Shown in pieces: positions 8,548 to 37,739 of a DNA stretch of 64,000 nucleotides. Location: assembly GCA_964188305.1 (NCBI GenBank), contig OZ076893.1. The stretch is one strand, 5' to 3'. Within the stretch, counting starts at the first letter, position 1. The number at the start of each line of letters is the position of its first letter. The notes beneath the pieces are model-generated. The model was not told where the DNA came from. It searched no databases and worked only from the letters and a program-made list of their open reading frames with translations. A program made the translations under genes and the position numbers. The stretch is from Podarcis bocagei (taxonomy: Eukaryota).

Positions 8548-8980
8548 CAGCGGCGTAGCGTGAGTTGTCAGCACCCGGGGCAACGCAAGTAATTTGCGCC
8601 CCCTAACCCGGGGCAAGGCACGTAATTTGCGCCCCCCCTAACCCCTAACCTGCGAGTTGCCGCTGGTGCTGCTGCCCAAACGACGCCGCTTGCCCGGAGG
8701 AGGGGGGGGCAGAGAGGCGAGGAAAATGCAACGGCCAGCAGCTGCAGCAGCAGCGACGGAGGCGGGGCTGTGAGGAGGGGCTGCCTGGCGCGTCCTCCAC
8801 GGCGAGCGCTGAGAGCTGCTGCCTGCCGGGCGCCTTCAGCCCGGGCGCCGCGAGACATGGGGCTCTGCTACAGCCTGCGCCCGAGGCTCTTCGGCGACTC
8901 CGGAGGCAGCGAGCGCGCCCCCCCCCAGATGTTGCGCCCGGTGCGGCCTGCCCCCTGGCACCCCCCACGCTACGCCACTG
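8548..8980 (+). mobile_element. Non-autonomous hAT element with captured host cargo (Pack-hAT copy 1)
   Basis: TIRs cagcggcgtagcgtg / cacgctacgccactg; 8-bp TSD ttctctct at 8540-8547 and 8981-8988; subterminal tttgcgccccctaaccc repeats; interrupts an otherwise continuous CORE-SINE. Confidence 0.93.
8651..8910 (+). pseudogene. GNAL: Transposon-captured fragment of GNAL extra-long isoform (XL-G-alpha-olf) first exon: GC-rich 5'UTR, ATG at 8857, MGLCYSLRPRLFGDSGGS
   Basis: Peptide matches the recalled human XL-Golf N-terminus MGLCYSLRPLLFGG at 12 of the first 13 residues; Kozak-like gagacATGG; very CpG-rich compared with the host intron. Recognised from memory, not searched. Confidence 0.8.
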
Positions 8981-10227
8981 TTCTCTCTTAGCCTCAGCCA
9001 CCCACCCTCTGAATTATGGGTGGCACAACTACTGACTTACCTTTCAGTCTTGTTGTAAGCATTACAGCTAGATGATGAATGTGAAGTGAACACTTGTAAG
9101 TGCTATGGAAGCACTGGGCAGGATTCACCTAACCAGCGGCAGAAGCCCTGCGTCAGGACTTCCAGTTGTGAAACAGGGCTTTCTTTTCCCCTTCTTCTTC
9201 CCTCATATGTCCCCTGAAATTGCCTTGGGATGTGTGTGTGTCATGAGAACCCACAGAGTGGTGTGCCAGGGAAGAAGAGATGGTATATTTTCATCTGGGA
9301 AGCTGGAATGCTTGCAACAGACGGAACAACTGGAAGAGCACAATGCTGAATTTGGCCCATTACAGGAACATGCCTGATTTGAGTCTTATTTCATAATCAT
9401 ATTGGAATTGAAGAGCATGCTGTCCTTTTTACTTGAATGCATATCAAAGCATTCTCACATATTCTTTGTATGTATTTTACCTGGAGAGTTGTAATGATGA
9501 CAGCCTTAGTGTTTAAGCAGTATGTAATGTTTATTCACCTACTTGACTGTGAATTTCCCCATCTTCAAAAGAATTAACACCCCCCCAAAGAAAAAAAAAT
9601 AAGGGTGTGCATTAGTACTAGTCATCTTTATTATCATTCCACTATTGACTTGACTGATATACTTGACTGATAATCTACCTAGCATGCTTTTACTTCTAAA
9701 AATGATCTATACAATCTACACATTCTCTGTTGTTTTATTTATTTATTTAAAGTGTACTGTTTGATTTTTGCTCAATTAGCAACCCTGCAAACATAAACCT
9801 ATGCTGAACATACAGGACATAAATTAAGTAAAGAAATACAAACTCAGAATAAATAGTCTTAGATAAATACTCTTTTTTGTTTGTTTATTCGTGCAATTAT
9901 ATTTGGTTTGACAACACTTATATTTTGTACTATTGATCTTCAGTCACCCCTAAGCCATCCAGTGAAATACTCAATGTAGACCCATTGCCTCACAAATGAC
10001 ACTGTCTTATATCTGCTACTTGCATTTCACAAAAGAGTCAGTTTTCACATTAAAATGTAAATAACTGATCCAAAGGGCACTGAAATGTGTCTGAACCATT
10101 CAATTCACTTAAGTAGTGTTTAAATTATCTGTTGGACATAAATGATGGTAAATCAATAATCAAAATTACACTTAACTATTGAACATGATGTAGAAATAAG
10201 ATCTTGTTTAAATAAAATAATAAATAA

Positions 10228-10263
<36 letters not shown>
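10228..10263 (+). repeat. (TAG)n microsatellite
   Basis: Direct reading. Confidence 0.95.
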
Positions 10264-13200
10264 AAGACTCAATTTGTAATAAGCTGGAGATGTTGGAAGT
10301 GTACAATCACGACTGCTTATCAAAGTTTGGGACAGTAAATACTGTAAATAGAGGAAATTGGTTTCACAAATACCATATGTGAGATAAGAATCAGTCCAAA
10401 TTAAATACTCTTAAGGCCCTTTGAGGCATGTAATTAACATACTCATTTAAATTGAAGCTTATTCCACCTTGGGCTGGATTGTGTGCTAAATAATTCTATA
10501 TTTTAAATACAAATATTGCACTATATTGCAATATGGTGAAGACTCATGGTGAAGTGCAGGTAAGAAATCTGATGTAGTAGTAGTATTGGTAGCTACCCTT
10601 TTATTTCTGCTTTAAATTTAAACAGGACAGATGAGTTTTCAATTTTTTTGTATTTCAATTTTATTATATAACTTTGAAATATTTTAATTTTTTAAAATTA
10701 GAGCAGATGTTTCAGAGGGAAAGTCCATGTATTCCCCCATAAAAATCTATCCGTTTTACAGCATCTGTTGAAATGTTGTGCATATAGGGAAACATACAGT
10801 TGTACTCTCTAGTTCATTACTTTCATTTAAAATGAAGATGGTCAGTAACAGTTCAGTCTTATATGTTCAACATGCTCCCAGGTTTGTATGTATGGGAGTG
10901 TAGCCTCTAGTAGATTTGAGCATCCTCATGGCACCCTCCAGCTTCTTACTGTCAATGCCCATCACAAATACCAGCCTTGAGCATTGTAGACTGACGCTGG
11001 AATCCAGTCTCAAAGAACATATGACTCTGGTGGCTGATCACGATTTTACTGTGTTTTATTTTCTGATATTACATTATAGTGGAAGCACAGTAAATCATGT
11101 GTTGCACCCTTCAAATGATGTTGTTTCATGCTGAGTCCACTAAACAGTATTAAAATTTTTAAAAAAACCCAAATAATACTATAAGAAAGCTGATACTTTG
11201 ATTCATCCAAAGACATCTATTTGCATTACAGGATCATTAAATACTATACCGAAAGTAACACATATAAAACAAACAGTTATAGCCAATTTGGCAGAAGGTC
11301 ACTCAATAATCTAAGTAGAATGGCACAGATACAAAATTATAAAAATGCTGTAAAATGGGTATTTGTTTCAGGGAATTTCCTGCTCCCCCTAAAAAGAATC
11401 AATATTGCCTGGTGTTATAGGATCAGTCTGAGCTTCTGAATCTGTTCATTTGGCAGTGGTAATTACTTCCTAGTAAAAATACTTGAGATTGGGATGTAAG
11501 AATTTTTTATATAAAAGTCTCTTAAGTGGCAGCCAGGGAAACGTCTATAAAACATTTTCTTATTTCCAAAGGCATAAGGGAAAATACATAGATACAACTG
11601 ACCTTAGATTGCAACAAAATAATTAGATATAGGGCACTCATTGGTTGATGTGCTGCACATCAGACGCTAGTTTTAATAGCGAAACCTATATGGCATGTGT
11701 TACCTCATTTGCTTGAATGTATAAAATCATCAGTAAATTTCTACAGGTAATACTAAGCATTTCTTTTTCAGTTCTATATGTAAATGTGCTTGTGTCCAAA
11801 CAGCATCATCTACTTCAAAGCAGTATTTCTACTACATGTATATTTGGGATCTAAACCTTCTCTCAAACCGCCAACATGTTCTTCAAATGAAAATTTTGTC
11901 CTTAAAATACAGATATTTAGTGATTCTAGTTATGGAATACACAGTGGATCTTCTGTTTTATGCATAACAAGTACAACTTCAAAGGTCTAATAAAATACTT
12001 TGTCAATGAAACCAGAATACCTCAAGCAGAACATGAATATACTCACCAACATCTTGTTACAGAATTAAGACTGAAAAAGGATTCTTGAGAATAGAGGCAT
12101 ATTAAAACACTCTCTCATACTGTAAAGCATGCAATGTAAATTAGCACAATGCACATGTTTGAGCAACATTCTGCATTACAAACTGAAGAACAGCACTGCA
12201 CTCTGTTGGATGTCCTGATATTGTTCTAATGTAATAAGCTCTCATATCCCCGGTAAATATATAAAAGGATTTGTCATTTTAAGACTTGCAGCAGCGCTGC
12301 ATTTTGACATCAGTTGTAATGCTTTTCATTCATTCTTGTCTGAGAATAAATGGAGGAAGCAAAATCTCAGTAACTGTTGGCAAAACCAGCCAGGGAGTGG
12401 AGGGATGGATGAGGCACAATACGTTATAGCATTATTTTGATGGAGGACCTACAATGCAAATTAATTAGAGAATAATTGCCCAAGATTACCATACAGCCAA
12501 AAAATGTAGTTACAGAAGGAAAAGAGGCAACAAACACATGTAGACCAATTAGTAATCTCTTTCCTGCTGCTGTGCATGTACATAATGCCAAATCCTGTCC
12601 CAATATATTCTTGCCTCAGTGAAATGAGTAGGGTGACTTGTAAAAGTAAAGACATACACAATCTGACAGGGCAAGGGCTGGATAATATGCCAGGTATATC
12701 TCCTGAGATTTGTGCTTTAGGATTTCATAATACGTTGATGTGATCTTTTCATGAGACAGATGTTCAGACAAGGCTGGTGGTTTGTAAAGGCAGGGAAGTG
12801 TGAAGAAGGGCTTGGCAAGCAGCCATCGTCAACAGGTAAATGAATGCAGAATACTGTATATATGGAGAAGGTTTGTATTGTTAACTGAGTCTTCCCAAGG
12901 CAAGCCAGAAGTCACATGTTCCTCATGGTTTCATTAAGTTAAATGAGATTTAGGTACAGCCTTGGGTAAAAGTGTTTGAGTGCATGCATGTGCACGCGCT
13001 CTCTCTCTCTCACTCTCACTCTCACACACACACACAAATGCACAGTTTGAAGTGAGTATGAATTTACGTTAGGCTGATATGTATTTTCCTCATCTCAGGA
13101 ACAGCTCTGTCAAACTGTTGTGTTTCTGTTGTTGGTTGAGGAAAGGAAAGATCTACTAAGATGTTTGCCTTTTATTACCCAACAAATAGGACACCTGTAG

Positions 13201-16200
13201 CTGTACTGAGGCTGTGTTCTTTGTTGACTTTGTGTGAAACTATTTCAAGGTGGTATGGAAGCCCTTATCTCAGAAATTAGTTAACTTCTAGTATTGCCTA
13301 CAGTTTCTATATTATCAATACTAGTGTGTTTTTTCTTAGAAGAGATTCATATAGATGATGGTCATCAGATATGAATGTGTGAACATGACATTCTTTTTTT
13401 AGGCAGGAAATTATAGCAGCAACAAAACTTTAAAGATACTTAGAGCAGATGTCATCCAAAAGGCACATTTTTTGTCATTTCCCCCATCAACTGCCTTAAT
13501 TATTTCCTGTGAGATGGGCAGATACTAATGAGAAAGAAGGCCTTTAGTTAAGAACTCTCTTCCAGATGTCCCCCTGCAGGGGAAGAATAATGAGGCTATT
13601 ATCTGAAGGCCAGATCTTATTTACCAGTTCAGAATAAGTTGCAGAATCCCCTCTTTTTTAGTATTACAAAATAATTTCTCCCCGGTGACCTGAAGATTTC
13701 AGGATCATTCTTTGATAGAGAATGTTTGAACTCTAGGCTGCTTATTGAAATGTGCTTTTGAAGAAAGAGTGAAAGGTTGAAGTTGCATTATTTGTTTTGA
13801 ATTCTGTTCCTGAGACAGAACAGGAACAGATGAACGCATTTTCTTTCTCAGAGCAACCATATATTTATCACCAATATCTGAATGGATATGGTAGCAAGAT
13901 ATTTCAGGCACAGAAACTGCAATTCCTTAATAACTATTAGAAGAATGATAAATAAAACTCTGCTAGGAATCTTTGACCAAAATAGTCTGATTAATATGTA
14001 TGTTGCCTCTTCTTAAAAAGAAAAAAAAATGTTTGGACATATAAAACTCAACCTTCCAAGACCTCAACAACCAGGCCTTTGGCTAATGAAGCAATTTATG
14101 GCCTTTTAAACTGGGGCGGGGTTTTTTTGTTTTTGTTTGATACAGTTATGTATTTTTGTGTTTTTATATTATAAACTGCCCTATGATCCCTGGATGGACG
14201 GTATAGAAATTTAATTAATTATAATTATAATAATGAGAAGGCCATGCACACTATGGCTAGTACTAGCCCCAATATTTGGTCCATTATGGAACTTGCTACT
14301 GATATTTCTGCTTACCAAAGGAGTGGCTAATCCCCAGTTTGGGGCACTGATCAATATCCCAAACAACCACCCCCAAATTTGGCAGAAGCAACAAAAAGTA
14401 TAAAAGTAAAGACAGTAAAGCCCAGTGCACTAATGGGAGGCAAGTTGCCCCCTGTCTGGTCATTAGATTAATAGTTTGCTGAATGGTGAGGGAACTATAA
14501 GTCCTTTCATCTCAGCCGATCTGCATGGGTCAACTGAGGAAGGAACCATCGCTGGTCTATCATGATGATCTGAAACCTGTGCTTTGACAAATGGTTCTGC
14601 AGGTTTGTTTCATTTCTTCAGATAGTTTTTGCATCCATTTTCATTGTGATCCTAATGGTGCCGTTCAAAATAAAAGCAGTATGATAACCTGTTGCTGTGT
14701 TATATACATTGACACCCAAAGAAATTGCTTCAGAATTTATATTATTTTATCCCTATTGTATTTCATAAACTAAAAGAAAGATGTATATTTTTCTACTACG
14801 CTTGGTATACATGATATGGTTTGAGGTAGATCAGAGCAAGACACACCTTCCACTAATTAATATATTTACATCTTCCAGAGCGTCAAGTCATGGTGGTTGT
14901 TCCATAATTACACCTGAAATGCTACATTTCCTATAAACAATTTTAATTGTTCTGATATTTTCAGAAAGATTTATCAACTGAATCATGTGAAAAGTTGAAT
15001 TTACGCCCAGACCTCTGTAGAAATTTCACTGTAACGCCTTACTACCATAATGATACAGTGATATAGTCACCATTCCTGCGTTTTAAGTGATATTAAATAA
15101 GCAGTCAGTTAAACAACTTTGCTCCTTGTATTCTAATTACCTTTCAGTTATGTCATTACAGTGAAACAAATTTAGATTACAATCTAGATAGCACCAGACA
15201 TTTTAAAATGATATGTTTTACAAGCATGGAGGCCATTTAATTCTTTATTTCTTCATATTGACATATATTAATCATCAGGATTTGAAACAAGCTTTAGCTG
15301 ATGAAATGTAATAACAAGTGAAAAGAAATACTATTCCTGTTTGTCTTTGCAGCACTGCCAAATCTATCAAATTGAAACTGACCTATGCAGACGGTTTGTG
15401 TAGTGCCCTTCAAATAATAAGCCCCTCAAGCAAACCACCAAAAAGTCTTTATGAAACCTAGAGAGTCTATGGAGGCCATGTTCACATATCACGCCAAGAC
15501 ATAAACTTCCACAGCACAGGGGAGAGGAGCAAAGTTACCCAATCAGCTTATAAGCCATGGTATAGGGCTTACTGAACATGGTCTCTCTGTCCTAACAACA
15601 AATGCCTCAGGATGCAGCGAAGGTGTGTTCAAACTAGGTTTCACTACCATTTAGAATGTCTGCCCATCTTCATCTTTCAAACTGGAAGTGACCATTCACA
15701 TTCTATTCCACTAGTCTATCTTAAGGGAAGGACCATATTTCAATGCATCTTGCTTATAGAAGGTGCCAAATTCAATCCCTACCATCTCCGGTTAAAAGAA
15801 CTTCAGACAATATGATCATGAAAAACCTCTGTGAAGCGTCATGGAGAGCCACTGCCAATCAGAGTAGACGATTCCGAGCTAGATAAACCAAAGGTCTAAC
15901 TCTGGTTTCTCATACAGTCTCCACTGTTGAGGATCTGGTCTCTCAGCCTCATTTGCAACTGCTACTGTTATGCAATGATGCTGCTGAAATAAGGCACGTA
16001 AGACAGGGAGGTGTACACTCTGCTCAGGAGAAGACTTTGCTTGCTTTCACTCAACTATGGCAACAGCTTTTGGACACAGCTACTTCCACATGCATGAGGG
16101 AAGGAGATTAGTCCTATGTTTTCATGGGGCAACAGCACACCTGAAAAACTTGCTACCCCTACATGCTTTTTTATTTGGACAGTTATGTAGAGATATAAAC

Positions 16201-16730
16201 AAGCACAGGCCTTTTGGGGATCATTCATGTTTGTAATTGTTCAGTGATGTGAACATGTGTATGAAATTTGGTCATATAAGACAGGAAAAATATTACTTCT
16301 TTGTAAATATATATATATTATACTCCATCTGTACCGATATTAGAGCAGTGTATAAAGTTGTGAGATAAAATTAATCAAAGTTACCAAGATCAGACAGTTG
16401 CACAAAGACTTTTCATTTTATAAATAACTTAATTCAAATAAAACAAATGTAAAACTACACTATTTACTAGACTTCAATAATATATTGCCCGTCAAATGTT
16501 TCAAAACACAATATAACTCAACAATCAGATTTTCACATCCGATATTTTTTCATGGTCTCTGCTCCCTTTCAATCTATAGTTCCCTTGTTCATAAGCTGAC
16601 TTGACTTGCATCAATTGTACAAATAGGACTTCCTGCATTTTCACTTTTGTCCTAAGCTAGAGATTTCAGCAGATGTCGCAATTGGTTTTGAACATAGTCA
16701 TTTAAGGTTCTGGAACAATGAATGGACATC

Positions 16731-16809
16731 AGAAGGAAGGAAGGAAAGGAGGAAGGAAGGAAAGAAGGAAGGAAGGAAGGAAGGAAGGAAGGAAGGAAGG
16801 AAGGAAGGA
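16731..16809 (+). repeat. (GGAA)n microsatellite
   Basis: Direct reading. Confidence 0.95.
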
Positions 16810-18085
16810 GCGACAAAATATAGACTGATTTATTGCTTTTATATAAAATACGGTTTTTTGGATGTATTTCTTAAAATGATATTTAAAAGGTAGATGATGT
16901 TTGAAAGTTATGAAAGGAAGGGTCTGAGGTTTGTTTTAGGACTTTTAATGGAAATGCTGGGATAATTTTCACAGGAGTTCTTCTTTTCTACTATAATGGG
17001 AAATGATGCGTGTGGTGTGGTATTTTAACATTTAGTTGGTGTTCGATCATGGCAGCAAAAAAAATGGTGTGTTTTTTTCATTTCTCTCTCACTTTCTTTG
17101 AGAAATTAGAAAGGTTAAAAAGGCTCCCCATAATATTAATGTTGCAATTAAGAAATGATCCCTTAAAATCTTAATCCTATAAAGCAAAACTTTATTTAGT
17201 AAATTTATATCCTGCCTTTCCTCCCAAAGGAGCCCAGGGTGACAAACAATGAGTAATTTTAAACAATTTTGAAAATGCTGAAAGCATATTAATTTGATCC
17301 TAAGTGTTTTTCTATAGTCTTACATTGCTTAGGCTACATTGATTTGGTAAAATGCCAAATGTATGTGTGATTGTAGCATAAGCACCATTAAAAGCAGTTT
17401 TCATGTCTCTGACACATGTTGTGGTAATTATGACAACAGGGCAACAATTAATACGCCCATTCCAAAATATAGAAAGATTCCCTTGCTATATTGACTCACC
17501 CACCACTAATGGCTGGACCCATGATTCTCACTGCTGCATCATGAAATACGTGCAGATCCCTGATGACATGATCAGATCTGTCAGCTTGGAATGTGTATAT
17601 CATATGCTTGGGAGGAAGGCCTAGATTGACTAGATTGACATTCCATCCTAAAGATAATCAGTAGGTAGCTATGTGTACATGGCATGTCCAGTTTCACGTA
17701 TGCATCCCACTACTACCAATGTGTACCTGTAGATTCAGGCCACTATATCATCTCTACAGGAGTCAGAATGATGACCCCGCAAAAATAAACAAGCATTATT
17801 TCTCTTCTGCTTGTTCCTTTACATCTTGAGGAGCTCTTCATTTTTTAAAATGAATTTCTATTTGAAATAACTGCAAACTGCATTTTTGAAGGCATTTCAA
17901 ATGCACTGGAGAAAGGGAGGGGGGATCCAGGTAATATGAAAGGAGGAAGAATAACCTCTGACCTGACATTACCAAAAATACAAATAAAAAGAGACACTAA
18001 GATGAAAACAAAATAGTGTCATGGATTTACATATGGGGTTTTTGATGGAAACTAGGGCTGGGGTTTTTTTTAGATCAAAACTCAC

Positions 18086-18148
18086 CATCTCAAAACCACT
18101 CCTTTTCATCCGCCTGCAGGACTTGAGGTAAGTACGTATACGCTTTCT
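18086..18148 (-). CDS. NOL4: NOL4 coding exon (~human exon 8), only the 3' 63 nt visible: RKRIRTYLKSCRRMKRSGFEM; the 5' part lies in the assembly gap
   Basis: Translation matches the recalled conserved NOL4/NOL4L motif; donor ATG|gtgag at 18085; sequence runs into Ns at 18149. A 192-nt exon would start near 18277. Confidence 0.93.
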
Positions 18149-18320
18149 NNNNNNNNNNNNNNNNNNNNNNNNNNNNNNNNNNNNNNNNNNNNNNNNNNNN
18201 NNNNNNNNNNNNNNNNNNNNNNNNNNNNNNNNNNNNNNNNNNNNNNNNNNNNNNNNNNNNNNNNNNNNNNNNNNNNNNNNNNNNNNNNNNNNNNNNNNNN
18301 NNNNNNNNNNNNNNNNNNNN
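18149..18320. other. Assembly gap (172 N) truncating a NOL4 exon
   Basis: Run of n characters. Confidence 1.
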
Positions 18321-18987
18321 GTGTTCTCTTCTCTTTCTAAGCTTCCTGGCTCAGTTACAGAGAGGAAGACATTTTCTTTATTTTTATTTTTCTTTATTTA
18401 CACAGTGAAGAGCTTTGTAATGGAAAGTCAGAAATGCTAAGCAAGCAAGGATTTTGTTTTAGGATTGACAAAAAGAAGACAAGAAAAGATTAGGCTGTAG
18501 TGTATAGAAATTGTGAGGGAAATAAAACACAGATTGTGAAAATAGGCACTGTTTTCATGTCTGTTATTAACAATGCAGTAGGATGCCTACATTGTTATAC
18601 TGAACTGCGTCTCTTACTCTTCCCCTGCTGTGAGCAATTTTTGCGTACGTTGTCATGCAAAATTATATAAATCTGGAAAATAATAGAAAATAGCTGGCCG
18701 CTGGAATACACTCCTGGAACTACACTGCAGCCCCCTAGTCCCTACTGCTGCTGTCCACTGAGCAAACATGCACACACACACAAAACACACAACTGAGGTA
18801 AATATACGTTAAACCTCTAAATCTGGTGAACTGGTGTCTGTTTCCAAGTGTTTCAATGTGTGCGGAGGGAGGGAGGTCCCCCTTCTAATAAAGTTAGTGT
18901 ACCTCTTTTACTGCCACATATACCCATAATAAATGCCACAAATAAGAAAATAAAATTCTGAAGGGCATAAAGCTCCATGTAACTCAC

Positions 18988-19167
18988 ATTAAAAGCTTTC
19001 AGACGCTCCGCTTCTACACCATCCGACTCATTGGCCTTCTCAGCATCTTCGTGTTCATCATGATCATCCTCGTCCTCTTCTCCACGGTTCAGGGAGAGGT
19101 CTTCTGCACCTCTGTCCATGCTTTCATTCTTGCCAGAATCATAGCTTGAATAGCTATGGGCAGGTGA
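18988..19167 (-). CDS. NOL4: NOL4 internal coding exon (~human exon 7), 180 nt: SPAHSYSSYDSGKNESMDRGAEDLSLNRGEEDEDDHDEHEDAEKANESDGVEAERLKAFN
   Basis: Overlaps ORF 18853..19119(-); acceptor tttattcctag, donor AAT|gtgag; phase 0-0. Confidence 0.97.
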
Positions 19168-19717
19168 CTAGGAATAAAGGAAGCCATTTTGTAAAACGTG
19201 TCTGAGGAAATCACCTGCTTCAACCTCAACAAATCCTTGCCTTCTCTACATACTAACAGATTCCCCAAATGGACTTTTTTGAATAGAAATTGTGTTCAAG
19301 AACTCTTTGTATGGGGCTTTAGAGTAAGGCAGCATGTACCGGTAATTGTACAGTTCATAAGTAATAATTTTTTTAAAAAAGCACAATTTAGCCATAACAT
19401 TCACTTCAGAAGTTGGGAAGAAGAGAGCCGATGTGATCCAATGGACAGGATGATTAATTTGGACTTGTTAAGAACTAAGTTTAATATTCCAGTTCTGCCA
19501 TGGAATCAGAGTCCAGCCTAAGGTAAAACAGTATCTGGGAATTCTTCTTATAGCCAGTTGCTCTTATTGTTGTTTGATGGATTTATCTTCAAAATATATT
19601 CAAAATTTATACATGCCTGTGCTCTTCATAACTGGCATGATACGCCTGCATTTCATGTTCATGGAAAGGGTCCTTATTACAATACATACTATAAAAATGG
19701 CATTCCAGTTACATTTA

Positions 19718-19720
<3 letters not shown>

Positions 19721-19768
<48 letters not shown>
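19721..19768 (+). repeat. (CT)n microsatellite
   Basis: Direct reading. Confidence 0.95.
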
Positions 19769-19773
<5 letters not shown>

Positions 19774-21247: not shown

Positions 21248-21328
21248 AGAATCATAGAATTGTCCAAGGTGGGGCTCAAACTCACAACCCTAAGATTAAA
21301 AGTCTCATGCTTAACTGACTAAACTATC
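21248..21328 (-). pseudogene. tRNA-Lys(CTT)-derived pseudogene/SINE remnant
   Basis: gtccaaggtggggctcaaactcacaaccctaagattaaaagtctcatgc..actgactaaacta resembles reverse-complemented tRNA-Lys with many mismatches; adjacent agaatcatagaat CR1-type tail. Confidence 0.65.
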
Positions 21329-25524: not shown

Positions 25525-25655
25525 CCCATTTACAGTGGTAGCCTGTAAGCAGTGGCCTATTTATCTACTCACACTGGTACACTTTCTAACTGCTAGGTTG
25601 GCAGAAGCTGGGACAAAGCAACGGGAGCTCACCCCGGCGTATGGATTCAAACTGC
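25525..25655 (-). mobile_element. Sauria SINE fragment
   Basis: cctatttatctact...actgctaggttggcagaagctgggac...acgggagctcacccc is the reverse complement of the SINE core. Confidence 0.8.
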
Positions 25656-27354
25656 CAAAAATATGACCGCTGTATGTATGAGGAGAAGGATTGTACTTCG
25701 ATCCTAAAAAGATATTCCTAAAAAGCTATTTAACAGAGATGGAATTGGGATCTAAGAACATCACAGGAAGCAGGTTAGTCCCCATAAACCATTCATAGGT
25801 GAACACATGTGCATAATTAGTTTGCTTAAGAAAACAGATTATGGCAAGTAAAACAGATTATGGCAAGCTTGTTTGTAGTCTGAAACGGTTCCTTTTTCCT
25901 TTTTCCTTTTTTTTCCCATCATTAACTCTCAGTGCCCCTTCAGCATAATGGTAGCATTTATGATGTAGTCCATTAAGCTACATTTTGGTATCTTGAAATT
26001 GTTTCAGGAGAGTCTAGAACTTTCAGAAATCAGTCATAACTCTTCTCTTTTGATCAGATTTGCCTCCACAATTGGGATCATATTTCCTCCCACATCAAAT
26101 GTGCTCTCAGATCCAGTTGCTTTCCTTTCAAACACAGACATAGATTTCCAAGACTGGAGCCTAACTTTTCAGATTAATTATGAATTGGCCTTTGGACTCG
26201 TTCATGTATCTGATGATTTAGATGCTTGAAAGAACTACAGGAACTTTTTATTGCCCAAATGTGGCCCATCCCGTCACCCCCAATTCCCATCAAAAAGGGT
26301 GTACTGTAAGTTCTTGAAGGCCTTGCAGGCACTGGCCAATGACTAGCACTCCCATTATGACCAGCATTGAATAACTGTAGTTTCTTGAACTCTCTGTTAT
26401 TTTCTCTCCACCACCTACCACCTCCAATAAGCAAGTTTATTTTTCCTCTGGTTTGTTTTAAGTACATCCGAATATCACGGTACAGTACATATTTTAGCTG
26501 GGCTTTGCTTTTCATTTCAAGTTACAAATTGCTAGGAACATTACTGAACAGATAGGATGTTTGCCATGACAAGTCACAGCACAATAAAGAAAAGTAAAAC
26601 TGCAGAATAGATTGTGCAAAATAAGAGAAAATATGTAAATGCACTCAGGTTGCAGAATTTATGAATCACAGAATTTGGCTCTGCTTGGTGCAGGATTTTA
26701 ATTGCCTGGGTGCAAAATTTTAATTTGGGTTGTTGCTTTTATAGTACAGCCATGAATAAAATGCAAATGAGGCAATCTGCCAACGGCAGAGGTTTGATGT
26801 GGCAGCATTTTGAAGATGGTGGCAGAGAGTTGGATCATTCCAGATATTTCTGGGAAATATAGAAACTTGTTCCAAGCTACCATGGATTTCCCAGTATCTG
26901 AGCAATTTATAGCTGGAGGGTTGCTGCAGTTTTATAGCCCCTTTGGATTGTCAAAACTGTGCAAAGATATCAGATTGCAACCAAAAATACCCTCACAGAA
27001 ATAGAGCTCTGCCCAGATCTGAGCATTGATGTTATTTATATTTGTTATTAACATTATGATTGTTCATAAGCAAATATGGCAAGATATTTTTTACAATCCA
27101 CCCAAATAAGCTGGTCGTGCATAAGGAAAATCAGACTTAGTGCTCACTAAGCATCAAATGTTTATGAATGTCTTTTAGAGTTCCCTTAATTTTAATAGAG
27201 TTCCCTTAATGCATTTTTAGGCTCACATGGGAGATAAGAATTGGAAAAACCTACATGGAGTCAGCATGAAAAGTTCTAGTATCTAAATTATTAAAGAAGT
27301 GCAGTAGATATATTTTAAACTTCAACTATAGGGCTATCTTCACAGAAGCTTAAA

Positions 27355-29494: not shown

Positions 29495-30470
29495 TAAAGT
29501 CAAATGGTTGGAGAATTTCTTTTCTCTGTGCTACTCCGAGCTGTCAATGCTTCTCTGGTTACTGCTGTTGACATGCAATCTGACTGTCTGTCTCCAGGAA
29601 CTGCGATCATCTGCAAGGAATTCCCACATGGTGGGCTTAATGCTTCCAGCCTTCGTGTTATGTTTGCAGACATATTTGTAACACAGAGTTGGTTGGCCAG
29701 CAGGAACAGGCCTAGTGCCAGCTCCCCGTTGAGCACATCCTCGAGGATCCTGCCATCTTCCATGCTGTGTACATGACCAAGTCAGTGTAGATGTCGCTGA
29801 GATAGGAGCGCGAACATGCTGTGGGAATGTAGGCTTGGGAGAATACATATTTGTTTGAGACTCTGCCTGCCATGTGATGCCCCAAATCTTCCTGATGCAG
29901 TGCATATGGAAGGCATTGATTGTTAGCATCACATTTTCCCACACCCTTTTGGAGAGGTGAGTCATTGCCATAGCTGTTTTGCCAATATGCTCATCCAGTT
30001 CAGCATCGATAGACAGGTTGCTGGTTATGGTGGAGTCCAGGTAGGCAAAATCTTCTACCACCTCAAGTGTGAGGTCACCAGTGCTGATGTGTGGAGTGCT
30101 GCCAGTATCCTGACCCAGGATGTTGGTCTTTATCAGGCTGATCGCAAGGCCAAACTCCATGCAGGCATGGATAAAATGGTTTATGGGTCTCTGTAGAGCT
30201 TCCTTGGAATGAGCTGTCCAGACTGTATCATCTGCAAACAACATCTCTTGGATTAGAAACCCGCCCCCACACACACACACATCAAACTGAAGGCATAGGA
30301 GAGCAAGAAGTGGGCATCCTATCTTGTTGAGCACTTGAAGAGTCTTTTTCAGCTGACCAGGTCAAAGGCCTTTGTATGGTCTATGAAGACAACGTACAAG
30401 GGGCACCTCTATTCTAGGCATTTCTTCTGCAGCTGACGCAGTGAGAAAATCATGTCAACTGCTGACCTCA
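29495..30470 (-). mobile_element. Degenerate RTE-clade LINE, reverse-transcriptase and 3' fragment with internal deletions
   Basis: ORF 29531..30334 contains EMLFADD..AHS.EALQ, LEVVEDFAYL.STI, RIGK-like and FHM.CIRKI.GITWQ; upstream K-A-F-D-L-V-S motif; frameshifted. Confidence 0.88.
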
Positions 30471-31637
30471 GAACATTGTGGCTCAGGATAAACTCTGTCA
30501 CTGAGTAATTGCAATCTGTTGAGAATTACATGGGCAAACACTTTCCTTGCAGTACTCTGCAGAGAGATTGCACAGTAGTTGTTACAGTCATGGTGGTCAC
30601 CTTTGTTCTTGTAGAGGGTTCACAGTGCTGGGGTCACACATGTCTTGTGGCACTGATCCTTGTTCTCAATACTGCAAGAGGAGGCTGTGGAGGTGTGTCA
30701 TGAGGGAGGAATTGAGGCCAGCTTTCAGCATTTCTATGGAGATTGCGTCCTATCCTGGGACTTTACCACATGTCTAAGAGTTTAAGACAATCTTCAATGG
30801 GAGGGAGGGACATCTAGCTCTTCCAAGACAGGCAGAGTTTGGATTGATAACTGTTGATTACTGTATCAGAGACTGTGTTTCCCCATTAATGCAGTTCCTG
30901 AGAGTGCTCTGCCCATCACTAGGCCCTCTTTCATTTTTATATTACTTTGTATATTGTAGCCTGTTGATTTTTCTGACTCCTTGAGTATTGAGTCCTTGAT
31001 TAAGTCCAGCATTGAAAGCATTTTTCTGCTACTTTTTTAAAATAAAAAGATAGAATATATTTTTCAATTTCTAAACATATTTACATCAAGCAAATTACAA
31101 TGATTTCAAGATCATTTCAGAATACTCATGGAGTTCTCACATTATTCATGTTGGGGGGGGGGATGCAAAACCAACCAACAACAGAACACAGTGGCACTCA
31201 AAGCACTTTCAGGGTAATTTATGATATGTCCCTGCTGGTATTAAAATCAGTGGAAGTATCTGGATCCTGTACTCAGTTTCAGTGGTATAAAGATAATAAT
31301 CCAGTGGGTAATATCAGATTTTAAAAGGCTGGAGTTTTCAGTGATAGAAGCAGAAACAATAATTGCAAGAATTCTGTTAGATTAAATTCAACTCTTCATT
31401 CTTCTTACAGTACACATTCATGGCAACTGCCTTCCTATCAGACTAGCTATCTAATCTGCTGGATCTGTCTTTAGCTACACATAGTCACCTTATTCTCTCC
31501 CAGCTAATACAATAGGAACAACCAGGGGTGCTGGAGGGAAAGTCGTTTGGAAATGTCAGCTTCTTAAAGCAAAGTTGTTGGTTTCAATTCAGACATGTTT
31601 GTACATGTTTATAGATGGCAATGAAAGCTTTAGTGCT

Positions 31638-31715
31638 TCTGTTGACACAATAAGGATACTAATACATACTGATCAACTCTGTTGACACAATAAGGATACT
31701 AATACATACTGATCA
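31638..31715 (+). repeat. Tandem duplication of a 38-bp unit (40-bp period)
   Basis: tctgttgacacaataaggatactaatacatactgatca occurs twice, identical. Confidence 0.95.
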
Positions 31716-32013
31716 TGAAACATGTGTGATTCATCCAACAGGAAGATTTCACAGGTCTTCTCAAAATACTGTATTTCAGATCAGAAATGAAAAACTTGCA
31801 GAATGTATTTCTGGTTGATAAAATATTGGTATTTGTTAGTATACTAATATGCACGTGAGAAATAGACAGTGTGAGCACAAAATAGCAGAAACAACTAGGT
31901 GTCAACAACTTTTCCAATTTCCTAATTTGCAAAGCCCTTGAACCGTTACAGTAGACTTTTCTTCTTCCTAATCTATGCTCTTGTAATATCTTGTGAACAT
32001 GGAAGCATCTTAC

Positions 32014-32297
32014 CTTGCTTCCATTTTCTTTTGCCTCTTGCTCCATCTTAAGATCAGATACTAGGATGTTCTTGTACTTGTTCTTTCCATCACTGCTTTG
32101 GTCATCTAACCTGTATTCTGACGTGAGCTGAGCAGAGAAGGGACTGTCACTCAGATTCAGCGGCTGTTCATCCGGTTCCAGAGGTGCTTTGCCATTACTG
32201 TTGGCTTCTGCCACTTCCCTGCAGTGTGTTCCCCCTGAAGCATTGGAACTGTGTCCTGCAGTCTCATTGCCGTTAAAACTCTCTGCAGCTGAATCAT
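32014..32297 (-). CDS. NOL4: NOL4 internal coding exon (~human exon 6), 284 nt: (D)DSAAESFNGNETAGHSS...DLKMEQEAKENGSK
   Basis: Inside ORF 31699..32400(-); acceptor tgtttcatag, donor AAG|gtaag; phase 1 to 0; peptide matches NOL4 (EQPLNLSDSP..AQLTSEYR..GKNKYKN). Confidence 0.97.
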
Positions 32298-33879
32298 CTA
32301 TGAAACACATGGATTTACAGTTTTTCAATGGCATGTCATCAATATTATCTTTATACCCAAACAACAAAAAATTACAAAAAACCCTACAACCTGCTGCCAC
32401 TCACACAACATTTCCAACAGTTCAGCTGAAAATATTTATGTGATTACCAGTCACTATTGACAGTCACAGAACAGTTAAGAAAATTTCAGCCAGAACAGAT
32501 TCTTTAATGACCTAGGCAGGTGGAAAAGGAAGGGCTTATCTTTCCACTTTATACGTGACATCATGACTCACTTGCTTAAGTTATATGGGGGGGATCTTTA
32601 CATATCCCAATTATTATGAATTATAGTTCTTTAAACCAGCAAAATATACAGTATTGGAATAGAAAGTTCCCATCCTCTGATGGAAGGAGACTTCCTCCAA
32701 TGGAAAGACTGCTTCTATGAGGGGATAATGCTCATTCCATCAGTTGGAAGGAAGGAACTATTATAGTCATCCTATTGGGAAAGTTTGGATGATCGTAGCT
32801 CAGCTTAATAGGCCAAAGCATGGATGAGCCTTTTGGCTGCACACAAAGCCTCTTGGCTCCTCCCTTCATGGCAGGAATAAACCAGGAAGTCTTCCATTAA
32901 CTATAGTTTCCTGTTTCATCCATACTGGGGAACCTAGGGTTAACAGCTTTGGAGGAAAGCAGACTACAGTATTTAAATCAACAGCAAATCATGACTTAAT
33001 GCCCAGGCTTGTCACAAAGTTTTCCACTATAGTTTCCCTGTTTGGTTGAAATGGAAAACTATATTATCTTAAACAAAATTGTGTCCTTTAAACACTTTTT
33101 TTGTTCTGAAGACATTGTTGTAAATAAACATGGTATGAAAAGAAAGTGCAGGTTACTTCTGCCTCTCATGTCAATCCTTTCCCAGGTCAATCAAATAAAA
33201 AAAAATCCAGCCAGACCAGAAGTGTCAGGACAGCATTAGGACGGTTACAGCAATAATCACAGCAGCTGCATAAAAGGTGGGATGCTGGAGGGTCAGACAT
33301 GGAAATAGACTGAAGGACAGAACAGGGATTTACAAGTGAGGGAGAGGGTGAGAAAATAGTACAGAAAGAAGAGGGGTTGCAAGGGAAGCCAGAGAGGTAT
33401 GAGAGAGTAAGAAAGGAATCCTGGGTTGGTAAGCCCAGTGATGAGCCAGTAAGAAAATGAAAGGGGGAGTGGTGGAGGAAGTGAATTACTATGTTAGAGA
33501 AAATAGAATGGTCCAGTGATAAGATTGGATCCAAACCTTTAGTTTAGGATAAGGGAGATAGTCTGGGGCTATGAGGATTATTGTGAGCTTGACAGGGAAT
33601 TCTGAGTTCTATCAATATGTTTAATATGGTTTTCCTAACAATTAATGAATTGTTTGTGCTGCTGAAATAAAATGTAAAGTCAATATACCGGCCATAGTTA
33701 GCCTTCCAATATTTTTCACATTGCTTTGTAATATCAATAGTATTTATGCTATTAATTGCTTGGTTATTGACCAAAAAGCAAAAGTAGTTTACAAACTGTC
33801 CCGACATAAAATTAGGAACACTTTGTTGCTTTTAAAAGAATAGTGATGAAAATGCATTGGGATTGTTTTGACAAGGTTC

Positions 33880-33990
33880 TATCACAGAATTGGAAGGGAT
33901 CCCAATGGTCATCTAGTCCAACCCCCTGCAATGCAGGAATCATTTGCCCAGCATGGGACTCAAACCCACAACTCTGAGATTAAGAGTCTC
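33880..33990 (-). mobile_element. tRNA-Lys head / CR1 tail chimeric SINE fragment
   Basis: gcccagcatgggactcaaacccacaactctgagattaagagtctc is the reverse complement of a tRNA-Lys(CTT) 3' half, joined to a CR1-like tail. Confidence 0.65.
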
Positions 33991-35459
33991 TGACTCCCTT
34001 TACCCTAATAGCAACATTTAAAAAACCCTAAAACTAAAAATCATGACTCAGTTTCTAACTACACAATATAGACACATTTAAGGCTGTTTCTATAGGGATA
34101 CTAGCAGATAGCAGTTATTGGGGATATGCTGGTTCCTAACATTCAGGTATAAAACGTCCTATATAGCTTGGATTATGTTAACATTACACTAATTATAACC
34201 TTCATATAGAAAACATGCACGTGAAATCTGGGTGGATTATACAAATGAATTTAAAAAGTTTGCCAAAGTCCTAAGCAACCAGGATAATGTGGAACAGAGT
34301 AGCAACAGAGAAAGAATGAGTGAGAATGCATGGAATTCACACCACTTGATTTTAGGTTCTCTCATTTTATTGGTTTTAAATTCAAAAAGCAGGCTCTTGT
34401 TAAGATTCTGAAATCAAGCAATTATTCAAATCAGAACCGTACTTTTGCTGAGCCAACTTTGCTTCCTGTACTAATTTTAGTATACAGAATTACGTAATAA
34501 GAATAAAAATGAATCACCAATTAAGAACATATGACATAGTCTGGCTTTTGTTTTGTTCTTATGAGACATTATAAAGCTGTGCTTTCTCCCCCTCCCCCAG
34601 TTTGCAAAATACCTTTGCCTGCTCATGGAAGAGTGGTTTCTGTAGCTTTTATGTGCAGTGCAAGAAATTTTAGAGGAGGCTGACTTACCCTATAGTTTCA
34701 TGGAGAGGCTGATTGGTCTTTTCCCCATCTTTTTATGTTAGTTTCCCCTCCCCAAAAAACTCATAGTTGCAGCAGGTGACAAGGATATCTCTCCAGCATA
34801 GTCCTCAAAGAATATGAGCTAGTAAGAGGTTGGAAGGAGAGTTTGTTTTAATTGGGGGGGGGACTGCCAAAGGGAAAAAATGGGGAAAGAAACCCTCAAT
34901 CACAAGATAAACCAATCCCTACCCCTATCTCATACTCACATTCTAGAAATTCACAGTTTCACCTATCCCTGTCCCCCAATTTGCTGAAACAGCTCTTGTT
35001 CATTCCATTCATTCCATTCAAACAATGAATATTTACCATTCATTGGCCTCAATTCAAAAATAGTCGTAGAACCTGTAGCTGCATGTTACAATCTATTTTA
35101 TCTGACAAATGGGAATGTATATTTCACATGACAGTTTGGATTGAAAGCACATTTCACTATTTACTTCAAGTAAGTTTTGCCTGTTAATATACCTGAGCTG
35201 CAACTGTTAAGTATGCTGTTGTGTAATATGTGACAACATAAATGATACTTTCATATGGTTAACAAGTTTCTTGCTCATGTAGAGTAGAATCTTAAGAATA
35301 CCAAACAAAAGCTAGGTGTGTTTGCCCGAGTTACAAAATATTGAACCAAACACTTCAGCTCTCAATAACAATGGGCACATTTGAGGACTGAGGACAAGGA
35401 AGATAAGTGTATGCAAGTGTTTTGGCTATGTTCTGACCAATTGCTGTATTCTAAATATA

Positions 35460-35760
35460 GAGAGAGAGCCTTTTCTGTGGTGGCTCTTCACCTTTCCAAT
35501 GCTCTTCCTAAGGTGGCTCACTTAAAGACCACATTACTATCATTTAGGTACAAGAAAACACACTTCTCTTTCTGATTTTAAGAAGGGCTTGTGACAGCAT
35601 TCTTTAATTTAGTTGTATGATTTTACCATCTATTTAAATTGGCTGTTACTGAATTTAGCTTGTTGTTTAAAATTTTAATCATCATTTCTTTTTAGCCACC
35701 CTGGAAACTTAAGTCTGTGTTGAAGGTGCATGATATACATTATATAAAATAAATAAATAG
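35460..35760 (+). mobile_element. L2 3' fragment with tail
   Basis: ERAFSVVA..SNALP motif followed by T-rich UTR and aaataaataaat tail. Confidence 0.6.
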
Positions 35761-36018
35761 GCCCTGATCTCATTAACCTCACATTATTGTGGTATGATTA
35801 GCCTGGATAGAGACAGTAAAGCCAAGAGAATTGGGATTCAATAAAAATAGCATAGATCTCCATTGCCCAGGCATCAATGGTCAGTGTAGTCAAGCACTGG
35901 CTGAGGGCCCACACCCTAGAAATAGGCCTATTGACAGAGTTGGCACCTGAGAAGAACCACAAAATGCCATCCCAGCCCCCTGGCTAGGGAAGAAGGGATC
36001 GGTGAAGATCTCCATCAG

Positions 36019-36170
36019 CAGTGGCAGATCTTAGGGTCTCAAATGTCAGCAGCAACCTGTGTGACACCAAAAATCAGTGCCCCCCCCTCACCTCTTGCCT
36101 TCTATTCTGCTTCAGAGTTGTGGCACCTGTTGCAGTGTCCCTGAGGCTCTGTGCCCTAAATCTGCCTCTG
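36019..36170 (+). mobile_element. Old hAT-type MITE (same family as 25210-25380)
   Basis: TIRs cagtggcagatct / aaatctgcctctg; flanks share catcag (degenerate TSD). Confidence 0.6.
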
Positions 36171-36285
36171 ACATCAGGAGTGGGGGGGGGGAGAGGCAGT
36201 CTCTCCTATTTGCCAAGAGGCTTCTGTAGAGGTGGTATGGAAGGGGGCTGCCAAGGCAGGTCAAGCCTGTAAGGAGCACACCACA

Positions 36286-36611
36286 CAGACCCTCCAAGTG
36301 TCCCTATTTTCCAGGGACATCTCTGATTTACAGAAGCCGCCCCAGTTTCTGATTTGATCCTAGGAATGTCCTGCTTTTCCTTAGGATGTCCCTACTTTCA
36401 TTGGAGAAATGTTGGAGAGTATGGCATTATCTAACCCCCCGAGCTGTCTTTTTTAAAAAAAAATAAATAATGTTTTATTATGTTTTTATATGTGTTGGAA
36501 GCTGCCCAGAGTGCTGGGGCAACCCAATAAGATGTGTAGGGTATAAATAGTAAAATTATCATTAAGGAATGTGATGTCCCTATTTCCATCAGAGTAATGT
36601 TGGAGGGTATG
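36286..36611. mobile_element. TIR element (CATACCCTCCAAC-type ends) with an internally duplicated end and an embedded LINE-tail-like segment
   Basis: cagaccctccaag ... gttggagggtatg; flanking caccaca repeat; gatgtcccta..aatgttggag.gtatg occurs twice. Confidence 0.6.
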
Positions 36612-36755
36612 CACCACAGCTGCAGTAGCATTTATTGGGGGCTGGATCTGCTGCCCCCGTGGATCCTACTGGAGGTTGTTTCACCTTGCGTGATGAGTCA
36701 GCCACCCCTGCCTCTTGGCAAAAGTACCCTAGACCTGCTGCGCTGAGGGTCTCAT

Positions 36756-37739
36756 CAGTGGCGTAGCGTGGGGGGTGCCAGGGGTGCCAGCCGCACCGGG
36801 CGCAACACCTGGGGGGGCGCGAGTCCAGAGGGAAGGGACAAGCAATCGAGGCTTGGTTGGGGTGGGGGGTCGTCGTCTCCGCCACTGCTTCTGTTTTCCG
36901 CTGCGCTGAGGTGAGCTGGGCGCGGCCAGGCATGCAAGCGCAGCGCCTGGCCAAGCGCTGCAGCCTGGGGAGCCGGCGCCTTAGCGCCTCGCCGTCGGCC
37001 GCGCAGCCGTTGCCCAAGCTCGACAACTCGTGGAGGGCGCCTCTCTCTCTCTCTCTCTCTCTCTCTCCCTGGAGGGGAGGGGCTTTCCCTGCTCTTTGTT
37101 CCGTTTGAGCAAACACAGCAACGAAACAGAGCAGGGTGGGCAGTAAGACCCTGAGGCAGAATGCAGGAAAGCAGCCACTTCCTCTTTTCAGGTTTCCCTT
37201 CTCCGGTACCTACCCACCCACGTTTATTGCGAGGGAAATCTAGCTGACTGCAGGGAAGGGGTTGGGTGCATGTAATGTGTGACAAAGGCATCAGGTGTAC
37301 GTCTTGGGTGGAAAGGGTATAAGGGTGGGGAGGTAGAGTGCATTTAAAAAAACCAAAACATTGTGGATTTAAACAAGGAAAATGTAGCATAATCTACTGT
37401 TTGTAAGGGCCCTTTGGGATTGGTTTTACCCATCTCAGACAGTTAGCTCATAGTGTAAATAAAGATGGCTGTTGTTTACATTTTTTTAATAAAAGCATCA
37501 ACAACGATCCTTTTGCACGGTCTGTTGTGCTGTGTTGCAGAACTTTTTGCAGTTGCAGGATTAGGGATGGTGTTCTGTGCTACAGTGGCATAGCGTGGGG
37601 GGTGCAGGCTGGGCCGGCCACACCGGGCGCAACATCTGGGGGGCCGCGCTCCACGGGTTAGGGGGCGCAAAATCCACGGGTTAGGGGGCGCAAATTACTT
37701 GCCTTGCCCCGGGTGCTGACAACCCACGCTACGCCACTG
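36756..37739 (-). mobile_element. Same hAT family in opposite orientation; composite element carrying ~760 bp cargo plus a nested empty copy (Pack-hAT copy 2)
   Basis: TIRs cagtggcgtagcgtggg / cccacgctacgccactg; 8-bp TSD ggtctcat at 36748-36755 and 37740-37747; 36756-36821 is approximately the reverse complement of the right end of the 8548-8980 element. Confidence 0.93.
37583..37739 (-). mobile_element. Minimal empty 157-bp hAT MITE (core unit of the family), nested as the end of copy 2
   Basis: Both TIRs present (cagtggcatagcgtg...cacgctacgccactg); two ccacgggttagggggcgcaaa subterminal repeats; no TSD of its own (left flank ctgtgcta differs from right flank ggtctcat). Confidence 0.9.

What the first reader, a model, noticed from the sequence alone, without database searches (positions are those of the whole stretch)
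8548..37739. A gene-fragment-capturing hAT family ('Pack-hAT') in a lizard: two copies, two unrelated CpG-island cargos, one cargo slot
Seen: elements 8548-8980 and 36756-37739 share TIRs (CAGTGGCGTAGCGTG), terminal modules and TAACCC/GCGCCCCC subterminal repeats, and each has a perfect 8-bp TSD. Each was therefore most likely inserted as a unit with its cargo. Their interiors are unrelated GC/CpG-rich sequence. The empty 157-bp core is visible at 37583-37739. In both copies the cargo abuts the same terminal module at the ...gggggcgcg(ctc) motif, within ~3 nt. Known: Pack-MULEs in plants preferentially capture GC-rich 5' gene ends, and TIR-mediated capture (Pack-TIRs) is considered uncommon in vertebrates. 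Inference: two loaded copies within 30 kb of one gene imply a high-copy family that repeatedly samples promoters and first exons and disperses them, an exon/promoter-shuffling system I do not know to be described for squamates.
Basis: partly seen in the sequence, partly recalled or inferred. Interest (0 to 1): 0.92.

Follow-up and report, generated by a model that had tools for sequence, protein, structure and literature searches.

The report
Cargo-carrying hAT-like MITEs in NOL4 introns
Two small DNA transposons of one GC-rich family sit in introns of a reptile NOL4 gene and each carries foreign, partly CpG-island-like DNA, a kind of gene-fragment capture already known in animals but apparently not yet reported for gene 5' ends in lizards.

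Summary
The described structures are real. E1 (8548-8980) and E2 (36756-37739) share a 17-bp inverted end and homologous left and right modules. Each is flanked by a perfect 8-bp duplication. Their interiors are unrelated and have no second copy in the window. Both lie in NOL4 introns; the N gap touches neither.

E1 is a classic Pack-TIR layout: 260 bp of CpG-island-like DNA at one point of the 157-bp element. It holds a good start codon and 18 codons. From memory these match the GNAL long isoform; no tool could confirm that.

E2 is different. 55 nt past the supposed cargo junction lies a right-end-like 11-mer (10/11, correct orientation, P about 0.006). So E2 is probably two family copies bracketing about 700 bp (end bypass or composite). 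Only its first 158-225 bp are CpG-rich. The "one cargo slot" claim is therefore weak (chance about 0.06; E2 junction ambiguous).

A TSD does not show that cargo and element moved together; in-situ gap filling gives the same picture. Donor loci, copy number and a transposase could not be tested.

First-stage notes of this scan report similar loaded copies on other DNA of this genome, two with the same GNAL-like cargo. These are unchecked.

Verdict: new member of a known kind (animal Pack-TIRs; lizard hAT filler DNA).

The parts
8540..8547 (.). E1 target-site duplication, left copy (TTCTCTCT)
   Evidence: identical 8-mer at 8981-8988
8548..8650 (-). E1 right module: end CAGCGGCGTAGCGTG, 33-bp subterminal unit x1.9, then CCCCTAA x2.3 (telomere-like on the other strand)
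   Evidence: 94% identical to 37674-37739 over 66 nt
8651..8910 (+). E1 cargo: 260 bp, GC 0.72, CpG o/e 0.81. No match to family sequence or to the rest of the window
8857..8910 (+). Start codon in good context (gagACATGG) plus 18 codons (MGLCYSLRPRLFGDSGGS) running up to the junction with the left module
   Evidence: Resemblance to the GNAL long-isoform N-terminus is from memory only; untested (searches found nothing usable)
8911..8980 (-). E1 left module, ending in the G-run + GCGCGCTC next to the cargo
   Evidence: 92-94% identical to the two other left modules
8981..8988 (.). E1 target-site duplication, right copy (TTCTCTCT)
36748..36755 (.). E2 target-site duplication, left copy (GGTCTCAT)
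   Evidence: identical 8-mer at 37740-37747
36756..36821 (+). E2 outer left module (66 bp); homology to the 157-bp copy ends at ...GGGGGGGCGCG
36822..36887 (+). Segment of uncertain nature ending in a right-end-like 11-mer CTCCGCCACTG (36877-36887). Possibly the degenerate right part of a first family copy (A = 36756-36887, 132 bp)
   Evidence: 10/11 match in correct orientation, P=0.0055 in shuffled interior. The rest is only weakly collinear with the right module (p about 0.08)
36888..37582 (+). E2 interior, 695 bp of non-family DNA. First 158 bp GC 0.715, CpG o/e 0.94, with a donor-like AGGTGAG at 36909; then (CT)13.5; then CpG-poor sequence
37583..37739 (+). Complete 157-bp family copy (B) forming E2's right end: both ends, left module, 23-bp unit x2, right module. 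Its left flank CTGTGCTA is not repeated on its right
37740..37747 (.). E2 target-site duplication, right copy (GGTCTCAT)

Best explanation
E1 and E2 are two non-autonomous members of one GC-rich, hAT-like MITE family (157-bp basic unit). They inserted in introns of NOL4, which runs on the opposite strand to the cargo features.

E1 is a Pack-TIR. A 260-bp piece of CpG-island DNA, most likely the 5'UTR and first 18 codons of a host gene, sits at a single point of the element (core positions 69/73). The likely cause is a double-strand-break or gap repair that switched template to a distant GC-rich locus and back. The G-run/GCGCGC at the break gives GC-rich microhomology, which would favour CpG-island templates (inferred).

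E2 arose differently. It is two family copies in the same orientation: copy A with a degenerate right part, and copy B intact. They bracket about 700 bp of host DNA. Either the unit moved using A's left end and B's right end (end bypass or composite transposition), or it was copied across two neighbouring copies during repair.

Shown: structure, TSDs, homology limits, composition. Inferred: host origin of the interiors, the repair and bypass mechanisms, and hAT membership.
For: - Perfect 8-bp TSDs and a 17-bp inverted end starting CAGTG.
- Modules are 89-94% identical, and the E1 insert lies between core positions 69 and about 73. This matches the small breakpoint distance (median 4.6% of the element) reported for animal Pack-TIRs.
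- E1 cargo has GC 0.72 and CpG o/e 0.81 against a window background of 0.40 and 0.22, with an ATG in good context.
- No transposase or other Pfam domain in any cargo ORF.
- No parental copy within the window, so the source is distal.
- E2 has an internal right-end-like 11-mer in correct orientation, P=0.0055 (0.0006 within the first 130 nt). The internal flanks CTTCTGTT and CTGTGCTA differ from the outer TSD.
- E2's outer left module is only 85-89% identical to copy B's left module, so it is a different copy.
- NOL4 context.
Against: - No donor locus was seen for either interior, so host origin is unproven.
- The GNAL reading rests on memory alone. Two word-index searches and one exhaustive phmmer search gave nothing usable.
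- The similarity of 36822-36876 to the family's right module is not significant (p 0.08-0.26). Copy A is well conserved on the left but almost unrecognisable on the right, which is odd for a plain copy.
- The 11-mer was noticed post hoc.
- No transposase is in the window, so hAT is inferred from the TSD length and the end sequence only. Each TSD fits only one of the two positions of the nTnnnnAn consensus (recalled from memory, not checked here).
Confidence: 0.6

Rival explanations
1. Both elements were loaded by one mechanism at one fixed slot after the left module. They belong to a high-copy family that systematically samples promoters and first exons and spreads them.
For: Left junctions at core positions 69 and about 66. 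Both junction-proximal sequences are CpG-island-like. Both insertions in the window are loaded. First-stage notes list many similar loaded copies elsewhere in the genome, unchecked.
Against: Coincidence of the junctions has chance about 0.06. E2 carries a right-end-like motif 55 nt beyond the 'slot' and ends in a full extra copy, unlike E1. Cargo orientation relative to the left module differs between E1 and E2. Most of E2's interior is not CpG-rich.
Confidence: 0.25
2. Transposition-independent gap filling. Plain MITEs inserted here first. Later breaks inside them were repaired with ectopic DNA, so the cargo never moved with the element.
For: This is the main origin proposed for single-copy animal Pack-TIRs. 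It gives an insert at one point of the element with intact TSDs (PMC8277862), as in E1. E2 could form by repair synthesis running across two neighbouring copies at a donor locus.
Against: That model shows a bias to nearby sources: 57% of parental copies lie within 15 kb. No source lies within 8.5-55 kb here. Unchecked notes report two more copies with the GNAL-like cargo on other DNA, which would require movement after loading.
Confidence: 0.25
3. The interiors are family sequence, not host sequence: subfamily-specific internal regions or leftovers of the autonomous element.
For: No donor was seen. Non-autonomous lizard hAT families are structurally very diverse (PMC3014272). The reported further copies of E1's interior could simply be a subfamily.
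Against: The two interiors are unrelated. No transposase-like ORF. E1's interior has a start codon and N-terminus that, from memory, match a host G-protein isoform. E2's interior includes ordinary CpG-poor DNA with a microsatellite.
Confidence: 0.1

Closest known systems
Animal Pack-TIRs, e.g. Pack-hAT-N8_XT of Xenopus tropicalis (Tan et al. 2021, PMC8277862)
   Same: A hAT non-autonomous element whose ends flank a short non-TE insert. In the frog case this is 291 bp of a 5'UTR, amplified to three sites with distinct TSDs. Breakpoints are close together inside the element. Multicopy cases tend to carry GC-rich DNA.
   Different: No parental copy has been shown here. Squamates yielded none in that survey (anoCar2: 0). 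The carrier is a very GC-rich 157-bp MITE with telomere-like subterminal repeats. Two loaded copies lie in one 64-kb window.
Pack-MULEs of plants
   Same: Capture of GC-rich 5' gene ends between transposon ends, with amplification of loaded copies.
   Different: Different superfamily (Mutator, 9-11 bp TSD; from general knowledge). The scale in this genome is untested.
Anolis hobo_AC and non-autonomous hAT families with filler DNA (Novick et al. 2011, PMC3014272)
   Same: Lizard hAT elements that incorporate extraneous genomic DNA and recombine with each other.
   Different: There the filler is mostly large, holds other TEs and sits in long elements. Here it is short, CpG-island-like, gene-5'-end-like DNA in a MITE. 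The end sequences differ from those listed for Anolis.
End bypass / composite (macro)transposition of TIR elements such as Ac/Ds
   Same: E2: one left end and a distant right end of two same-orientation copies delimit the unit, a single TSD lies outside, and the internal ends are unpaired.
   Different: The internal right end is only an 11-mer match. The donor arrangement has not been seen.

Membership tests
hAT superfamily, non-autonomous (MITE) | 8-bp target-site duplication | tested here: met
   Two perfect 8/8 duplications
hAT superfamily, non-autonomous (MITE) | Short terminal inverted repeats starting YARNG | tested here: met
   17-bp inverted end CAGTGGCGTAGCGTGGG. The Anolis hAT ends listed in PMC3014272 also start CAG. 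The YARNG rule is from general knowledge.
hAT superfamily, non-autonomous (MITE) | Target consensus nTnnnnAn (recalled from memory) | tested here: inconclusive
   TTCTCTCT fits position 2 only; GGTCTCAT fits position 7 only. n=2.
hAT superfamily, non-autonomous (MITE) | Autonomous partner with the same ends encoding a hAT transposase | not testable with these tools
   No transposase in the window and no access to the rest of the genome. An unchecked note (s1-345158) claims autonomous copies elsewhere.
Pack-TIR (criteria of PMC8277862) | Both flanks cover at least 10 bp of the element's terminals | tested here: met
   E1: 70-bp and 103-bp modules. E2: 66 bp and 157 bp. Both were judged against the 157-bp copy, not a family consensus.
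Pack-TIR (criteria of PMC8277862) | Internal sequence is non-TE | tested here: inconclusive
   No family homology, no Pfam domain, no other copy in the window. No repeat library was available.
Pack-TIR (criteria of PMC8277862) | Unique parental copy elsewhere (at least 90% identity, 80-120% length, not flanked by TEs) | not testable with these tools
   No eukaryotic genome could be searched. Protein routes to the suspected parent failed.
Multicopy (transposed) Pack-TIR | Same cargo at several sites with different TSDs | not testable with these tools
   Only unchecked first-stage notes (s1-354162, s1-340169).
Composite / end-bypass element (E2) | Two same-orientation copies bracket host DNA, one TSD outside, internal ends unpaired | tested here: inconclusive
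   Outer TSD perfect. Internal flanks CTTCTGTT and CTGTGCTA are unpaired. The internal right end is a 10/11 match, P=0.0055, but the remaining right part is not significantly similar.

The most novel reading that the evidence does not exclude
This lizard carries an animal counterpart of plant Pack-MULEs. A recently active, GC-rich hAT MITE family has loaded itself with hundreds of different CpG-island 5' gene ends and amplified many of them. GC-rich microhomology at a preferred break after the left module aids the loading. The family thereby scatters portable CpG islands, promoters and first exons into CpG-poor introns.
Probability: 0.3. Interest if true: 0.8.

Novelty: new member of a known kind. 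Interest (0 to 1): 0.55.

Why it matters
DNA-transposon-mediated gene-fragment capture is thought to be rare and mostly single-copy in animals: 370 cases in 100 genomes, only 4 of them multicopy, and none in the one squamate surveyed. A lizard MITE family that often carries, and perhaps amplifies, CpG-island 5' ends would give a vertebrate system for studying how capture happens. E1 and E2 look like two different routes side by side. It would also let one test whether dispersed CpG islands create new promoters or antisense transcripts in host genes such as NOL4. From this window alone, only two loaded copies are established.

Tried and rejected
- Identity of E1's cargo. I tried search for homologous proteins with the 121-aa ORF and with its residues 58-98 at E up to 10. 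I also ran an exhaustive phmmer search of the 30-aa start against 1.84 billion representatives (the only hit, P0001, is a bacterial repeat protein with six summed stretches and is spurious). The atlas look-alikes were all weak (scores 0.52 or less). A paper search for the peptide gave 0. The length window of the word-index tool and the E 0.001 listing limit make these blanks uninformative. They are not negative evidence.
- Other family copies. Exact scans of metagenome contigs with both ends gave 0. An exact look-up of seven element ORFs in the protein collection gave none. A paper search for the end sequence gave 0.
- G-quadruplex idea for the 'slot'. No canonical G4 motif (loops up to 7) lies in either element. 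The fold of the 157-bp copy is not unusual (z = -1.65). I dropped the idea.
- Shared loaded ancestor of E1 and E2. E1's left module is no closer to E2's outer left module (92.5%) than to the unloaded copy's (94.0%). Not supported.
- Hidden internal ends in E1. The best match has 5 of 17 mismatches, which is within chance. Rejected.
- The end-like 11-mer at 56826 has no family sequence around it. It is a chance hit.
- The other CpG-rich patches of the window are copies of a SINE-like repeat of about 365 bp, not this family.
Full report
**Observation**

E1 is 8548-8980 (433 bp), with TTCTCTCT directly on both sides. E2 is 36756-37739 (984 bp), with GGTCTCAT directly on both sides.

The 15-mer end CAGTGGCGTAGCGTG occurs five times with at most one mismatch. 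All five are at the element boundaries. The chance expectation, counted for matches with up to three mismatches, is 0.36. The perfect inverted end is 17 bp.

E1 lies in the opposite orientation to E2. A complete 157-bp element (37583-37739) forms E2's right end. Its left flank, CTGTGCTA, is not repeated on its right, so the duplication belongs to the whole 984-bp unit.

Left modules are 89-94% identical pairwise. The terminal 66 nt of the right modules are 94% identical. The right part carries tandem subterminal units of 33 bp x1.9 in E1 and 23 bp x2.0 in the 157-bp copy. These units contain GGGTTAGGGGGCGC.

**The assembly gap**

The only N run is 18149-18320. It lies 9.2 kb from E1 and 18.4 kb from E2 and touches neither. 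Four NOL4 proteins returned were aligned to the window by tblastn. The exons fall at 32304-32014, 19203-18937, 18148-18086, 7928-7818 and 2887-2639. All are on the minus strand and in protein order.

So the two sides of the gap are collinear. The exon at 18086-18148 runs straight into the gap. About 36 NOL4 residues between it and the previous exon have no match in the window. Continuity and frame across the gap cannot be established, and I did not try to fill it. The stated distance of about 28 kb between the elements carries the gap's uncertainty.

**Context**

The window is the middle of NOL4. Hits reach E 5e-48 and are named nucleolar protein 4. The best named squamate hit is Anolis sagrei at 91% identity, and two unnamed assembly ORFs reach 89-91%. 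That fits a squamate. I cannot confirm a lacertid.

Both elements are intronic. E1 lies 620 bp from the exon at 7818-7928. The gene-like features of both interiors are on the plus strand, antisense to NOL4.

**E1**

Homology to the 157-bp copy runs to core position 69 (...GCGCTC) and resumes at about position 73 (GGTTAGG...). The 260 bp at 8651-8910 are therefore an insert at a single point. The insert has GC 0.72 and CpG o/e 0.81. The flanks have o/e 0.12-0.19 and the window as a whole 0.22.

The insert has an ATG at 8857 in good context (A at -3, G at +4). Eighteen codons, MGLCYSLRPRLFGDSGGS, run up to the junction. From memory, the long isoform of human GNAL starts MGLCYSLRPLLFGG. A paper notes that mouse Gnal has a minor long isoform transcribed from a distal CpG island (PMC7099774).

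I could not test the identity. Two word-index searches, one exhaustive phmmer search, an atlas search and a literature search gave nothing usable. The tools' length and E-value limits make these blanks uninformative. The cargo ORFs hit no Pfam family, so there is no sign of transposase remnants.

**E2**

The outer left module matches the family to core position about 66 (...GGGGGGGCGCG). What follows is not significantly similar to the family's right part (p 0.08-0.26 in shuffle tests).

However, at 36877-36887 there is CTCCGCCACTG. This is a 10/11 match to the family's terminal 11-mer, in the orientation of a right end. Such a match is expected 0.34 times in the whole window on both strands. 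It arises in only 0.55% of shuffles of the 761-bp interior and in 0.06% of shuffles of its first 130 nt. The one other extra match in the window (56826) has no family sequence around it.

I therefore read E2 as probably four-ended:
- Copy A, 36756-36887 (132 bp): good left module, degenerate right part.
- 695 bp of non-family DNA, 36888-37582.
- Copy B, 37583-37739: intact.

The internal flanks CTTCTGTT and CTGTGCTA pair with nothing. A's left module is only 85-89% identical to B's, so these are distinct copies.

Within the 695 bp, only the first 158 bp are CpG-island-like (GC 0.715, o/e 0.94), with a donor-like AGGTGAG at 36909. A (CT)13.5 run follows, and then ordinary DNA with GC 0.46 and o/e 0.31.

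**Mechanism**

*E1.* The layout, with breakpoints 4 nt apart in a 157-bp element, matches animal Pack-TIRs. There the breakpoint distance has a median of 4.6% of the element's length, and template switching during break or gap repair is the proposed cause (PMC8277862). I infer the same for E1. The G-run plus GCGCGC at the break would offer GC-rich microhomology and so favour CpG-island templates. This needs the donor sequence to be tested.

*E2.* The simplest account is end bypass or composite mobilisation. A's defective right end was skipped and B's right end, about 700 bp downstream at the donor locus, was used. The intervening host DNA moved with them and one new TSD was made. An alternative gives the same product: repair of a resident copy here that copied across two neighbouring copies elsewhere.

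*What the TSD does not show.* A perfect TSD does not prove that cargo and element arrived together. In-situ filling of a resident element leaves the same TSD. Against a purely local in-situ origin, no source of either interior lies within the window. In the animal survey, 57% of parental copies lay within 15 kb.

**The 'one cargo slot'**

The numerical coincidence (positions 69 and about 66) is real. For two junctions among about 123 internal positions, the chance of falling within 3 nt is about 0.06. If E2 is a composite, its 'junction' is where copy A's interior departs from the family and not a cargo boundary.

E1's left module is no closer to E2's outer left module than to the unloaded copy's. 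A shared loaded ancestor is therefore not indicated. No canonical G4 motif or unusually stable fold explains a hotspot.

**What is known**

Pack-TIRs were catalogued in 100 animal genomes: 370 cases, of which 208 are hAT. Only four are multicopy (frog and alligator). One frog hAT MITE carries 291 bp of a 5'UTR at three sites. Multicopy cases tend to carry GC-rich DNA.

The one squamate in that survey, anoCar2, had 0 Pack-TIRs, but only 77 TIR elements were considered. In Anolis, most non-autonomous DNA transposon families show 'incorporation of extraneous DNA sequences' and inter-element recombination (PMC3014272). No paper in the library links Pack-TIRs with squamates.

So the kind is known. 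A squamate MITE carrying gene-5'-end-like CpG islands appears not to have been described.

**Earlier notes of this scan**

These are unchecked first-stage notes. On other DNA of the same genome they list two more copies with the GNAL-like cargo (435 and 447 letters). They also list loaded copies said to carry 5' ends of PACS1, SIX5, and NUDT19-like and RANBP9-like genes, a 163-letter unloaded copy, and a stretch said to hold autonomous copies.

If true, E1 moved after loading and the family is a prolific capturer. I could test none of this. My scores rest on the window.

**Verdict**

The Pack-type reading fits E1. E2 is better read as a composite of two copies. The single-slot, high-copy and promoter-sampling claims remain untested. 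I class it as a new member of a known kind, of moderate interest. The upside is substantial if a genome-wide survey confirms many independent, amplified captures of CpG-island 5' ends.

Noticed in passing
window 18086-18320: A NOL4 coding exon (18086-18148, minus strand) runs directly into the N gap at 18149. About 36 residues of NOL4 between this exon and the one at 18937-19203 have no match in the window.
   Followed up: partly
window 41669-42030, 49461-49829, 59310-59676 (partial 25545-25656): Three to four copies of a CpG-rich repeat of about 365 bp (74-88% identical), probably a SINE. They account for most other CpG-island-like patches of the window.
   Followed up: partly
window 48282-49365: A cluster of long inverted repeats: arms of 77-84 nt at 88-95% complementarity, plus nested hairpins of 30-33 nt. 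It looks like two inverted copies of another foldback or MITE-like element.
   Followed up: no
window 43331-43549 and 45294-45545: Several copies of a roughly 25-nt inverted end, TACAGTGGTACCTCGGGTTAAG, in both orientations. This suggests a second, unrelated MITE family (Tc1/mariner-like TA...CAGTG ends).
   Followed up: no
window 29534-30361 (-): A 276-aa open frame with a reverse-transcriptase-like motif (FADD), i.e. a LINE fragment in the NOL4 intron.
   Followed up: no
window 8600-8650, 37656-37690: The family's subterminal units contain telomere-like GGTTAGGGG motifs: 2 in the 157-bp copy and 3 in E1, with variable unit number and length.
   Followed up: partly
window 21269-21326 (-): A weak tRNA-like match just above Rfam's gathering score (29.8 bits, E 0.037), probably part of a tRNA-derived repeat.
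   Followed up: no
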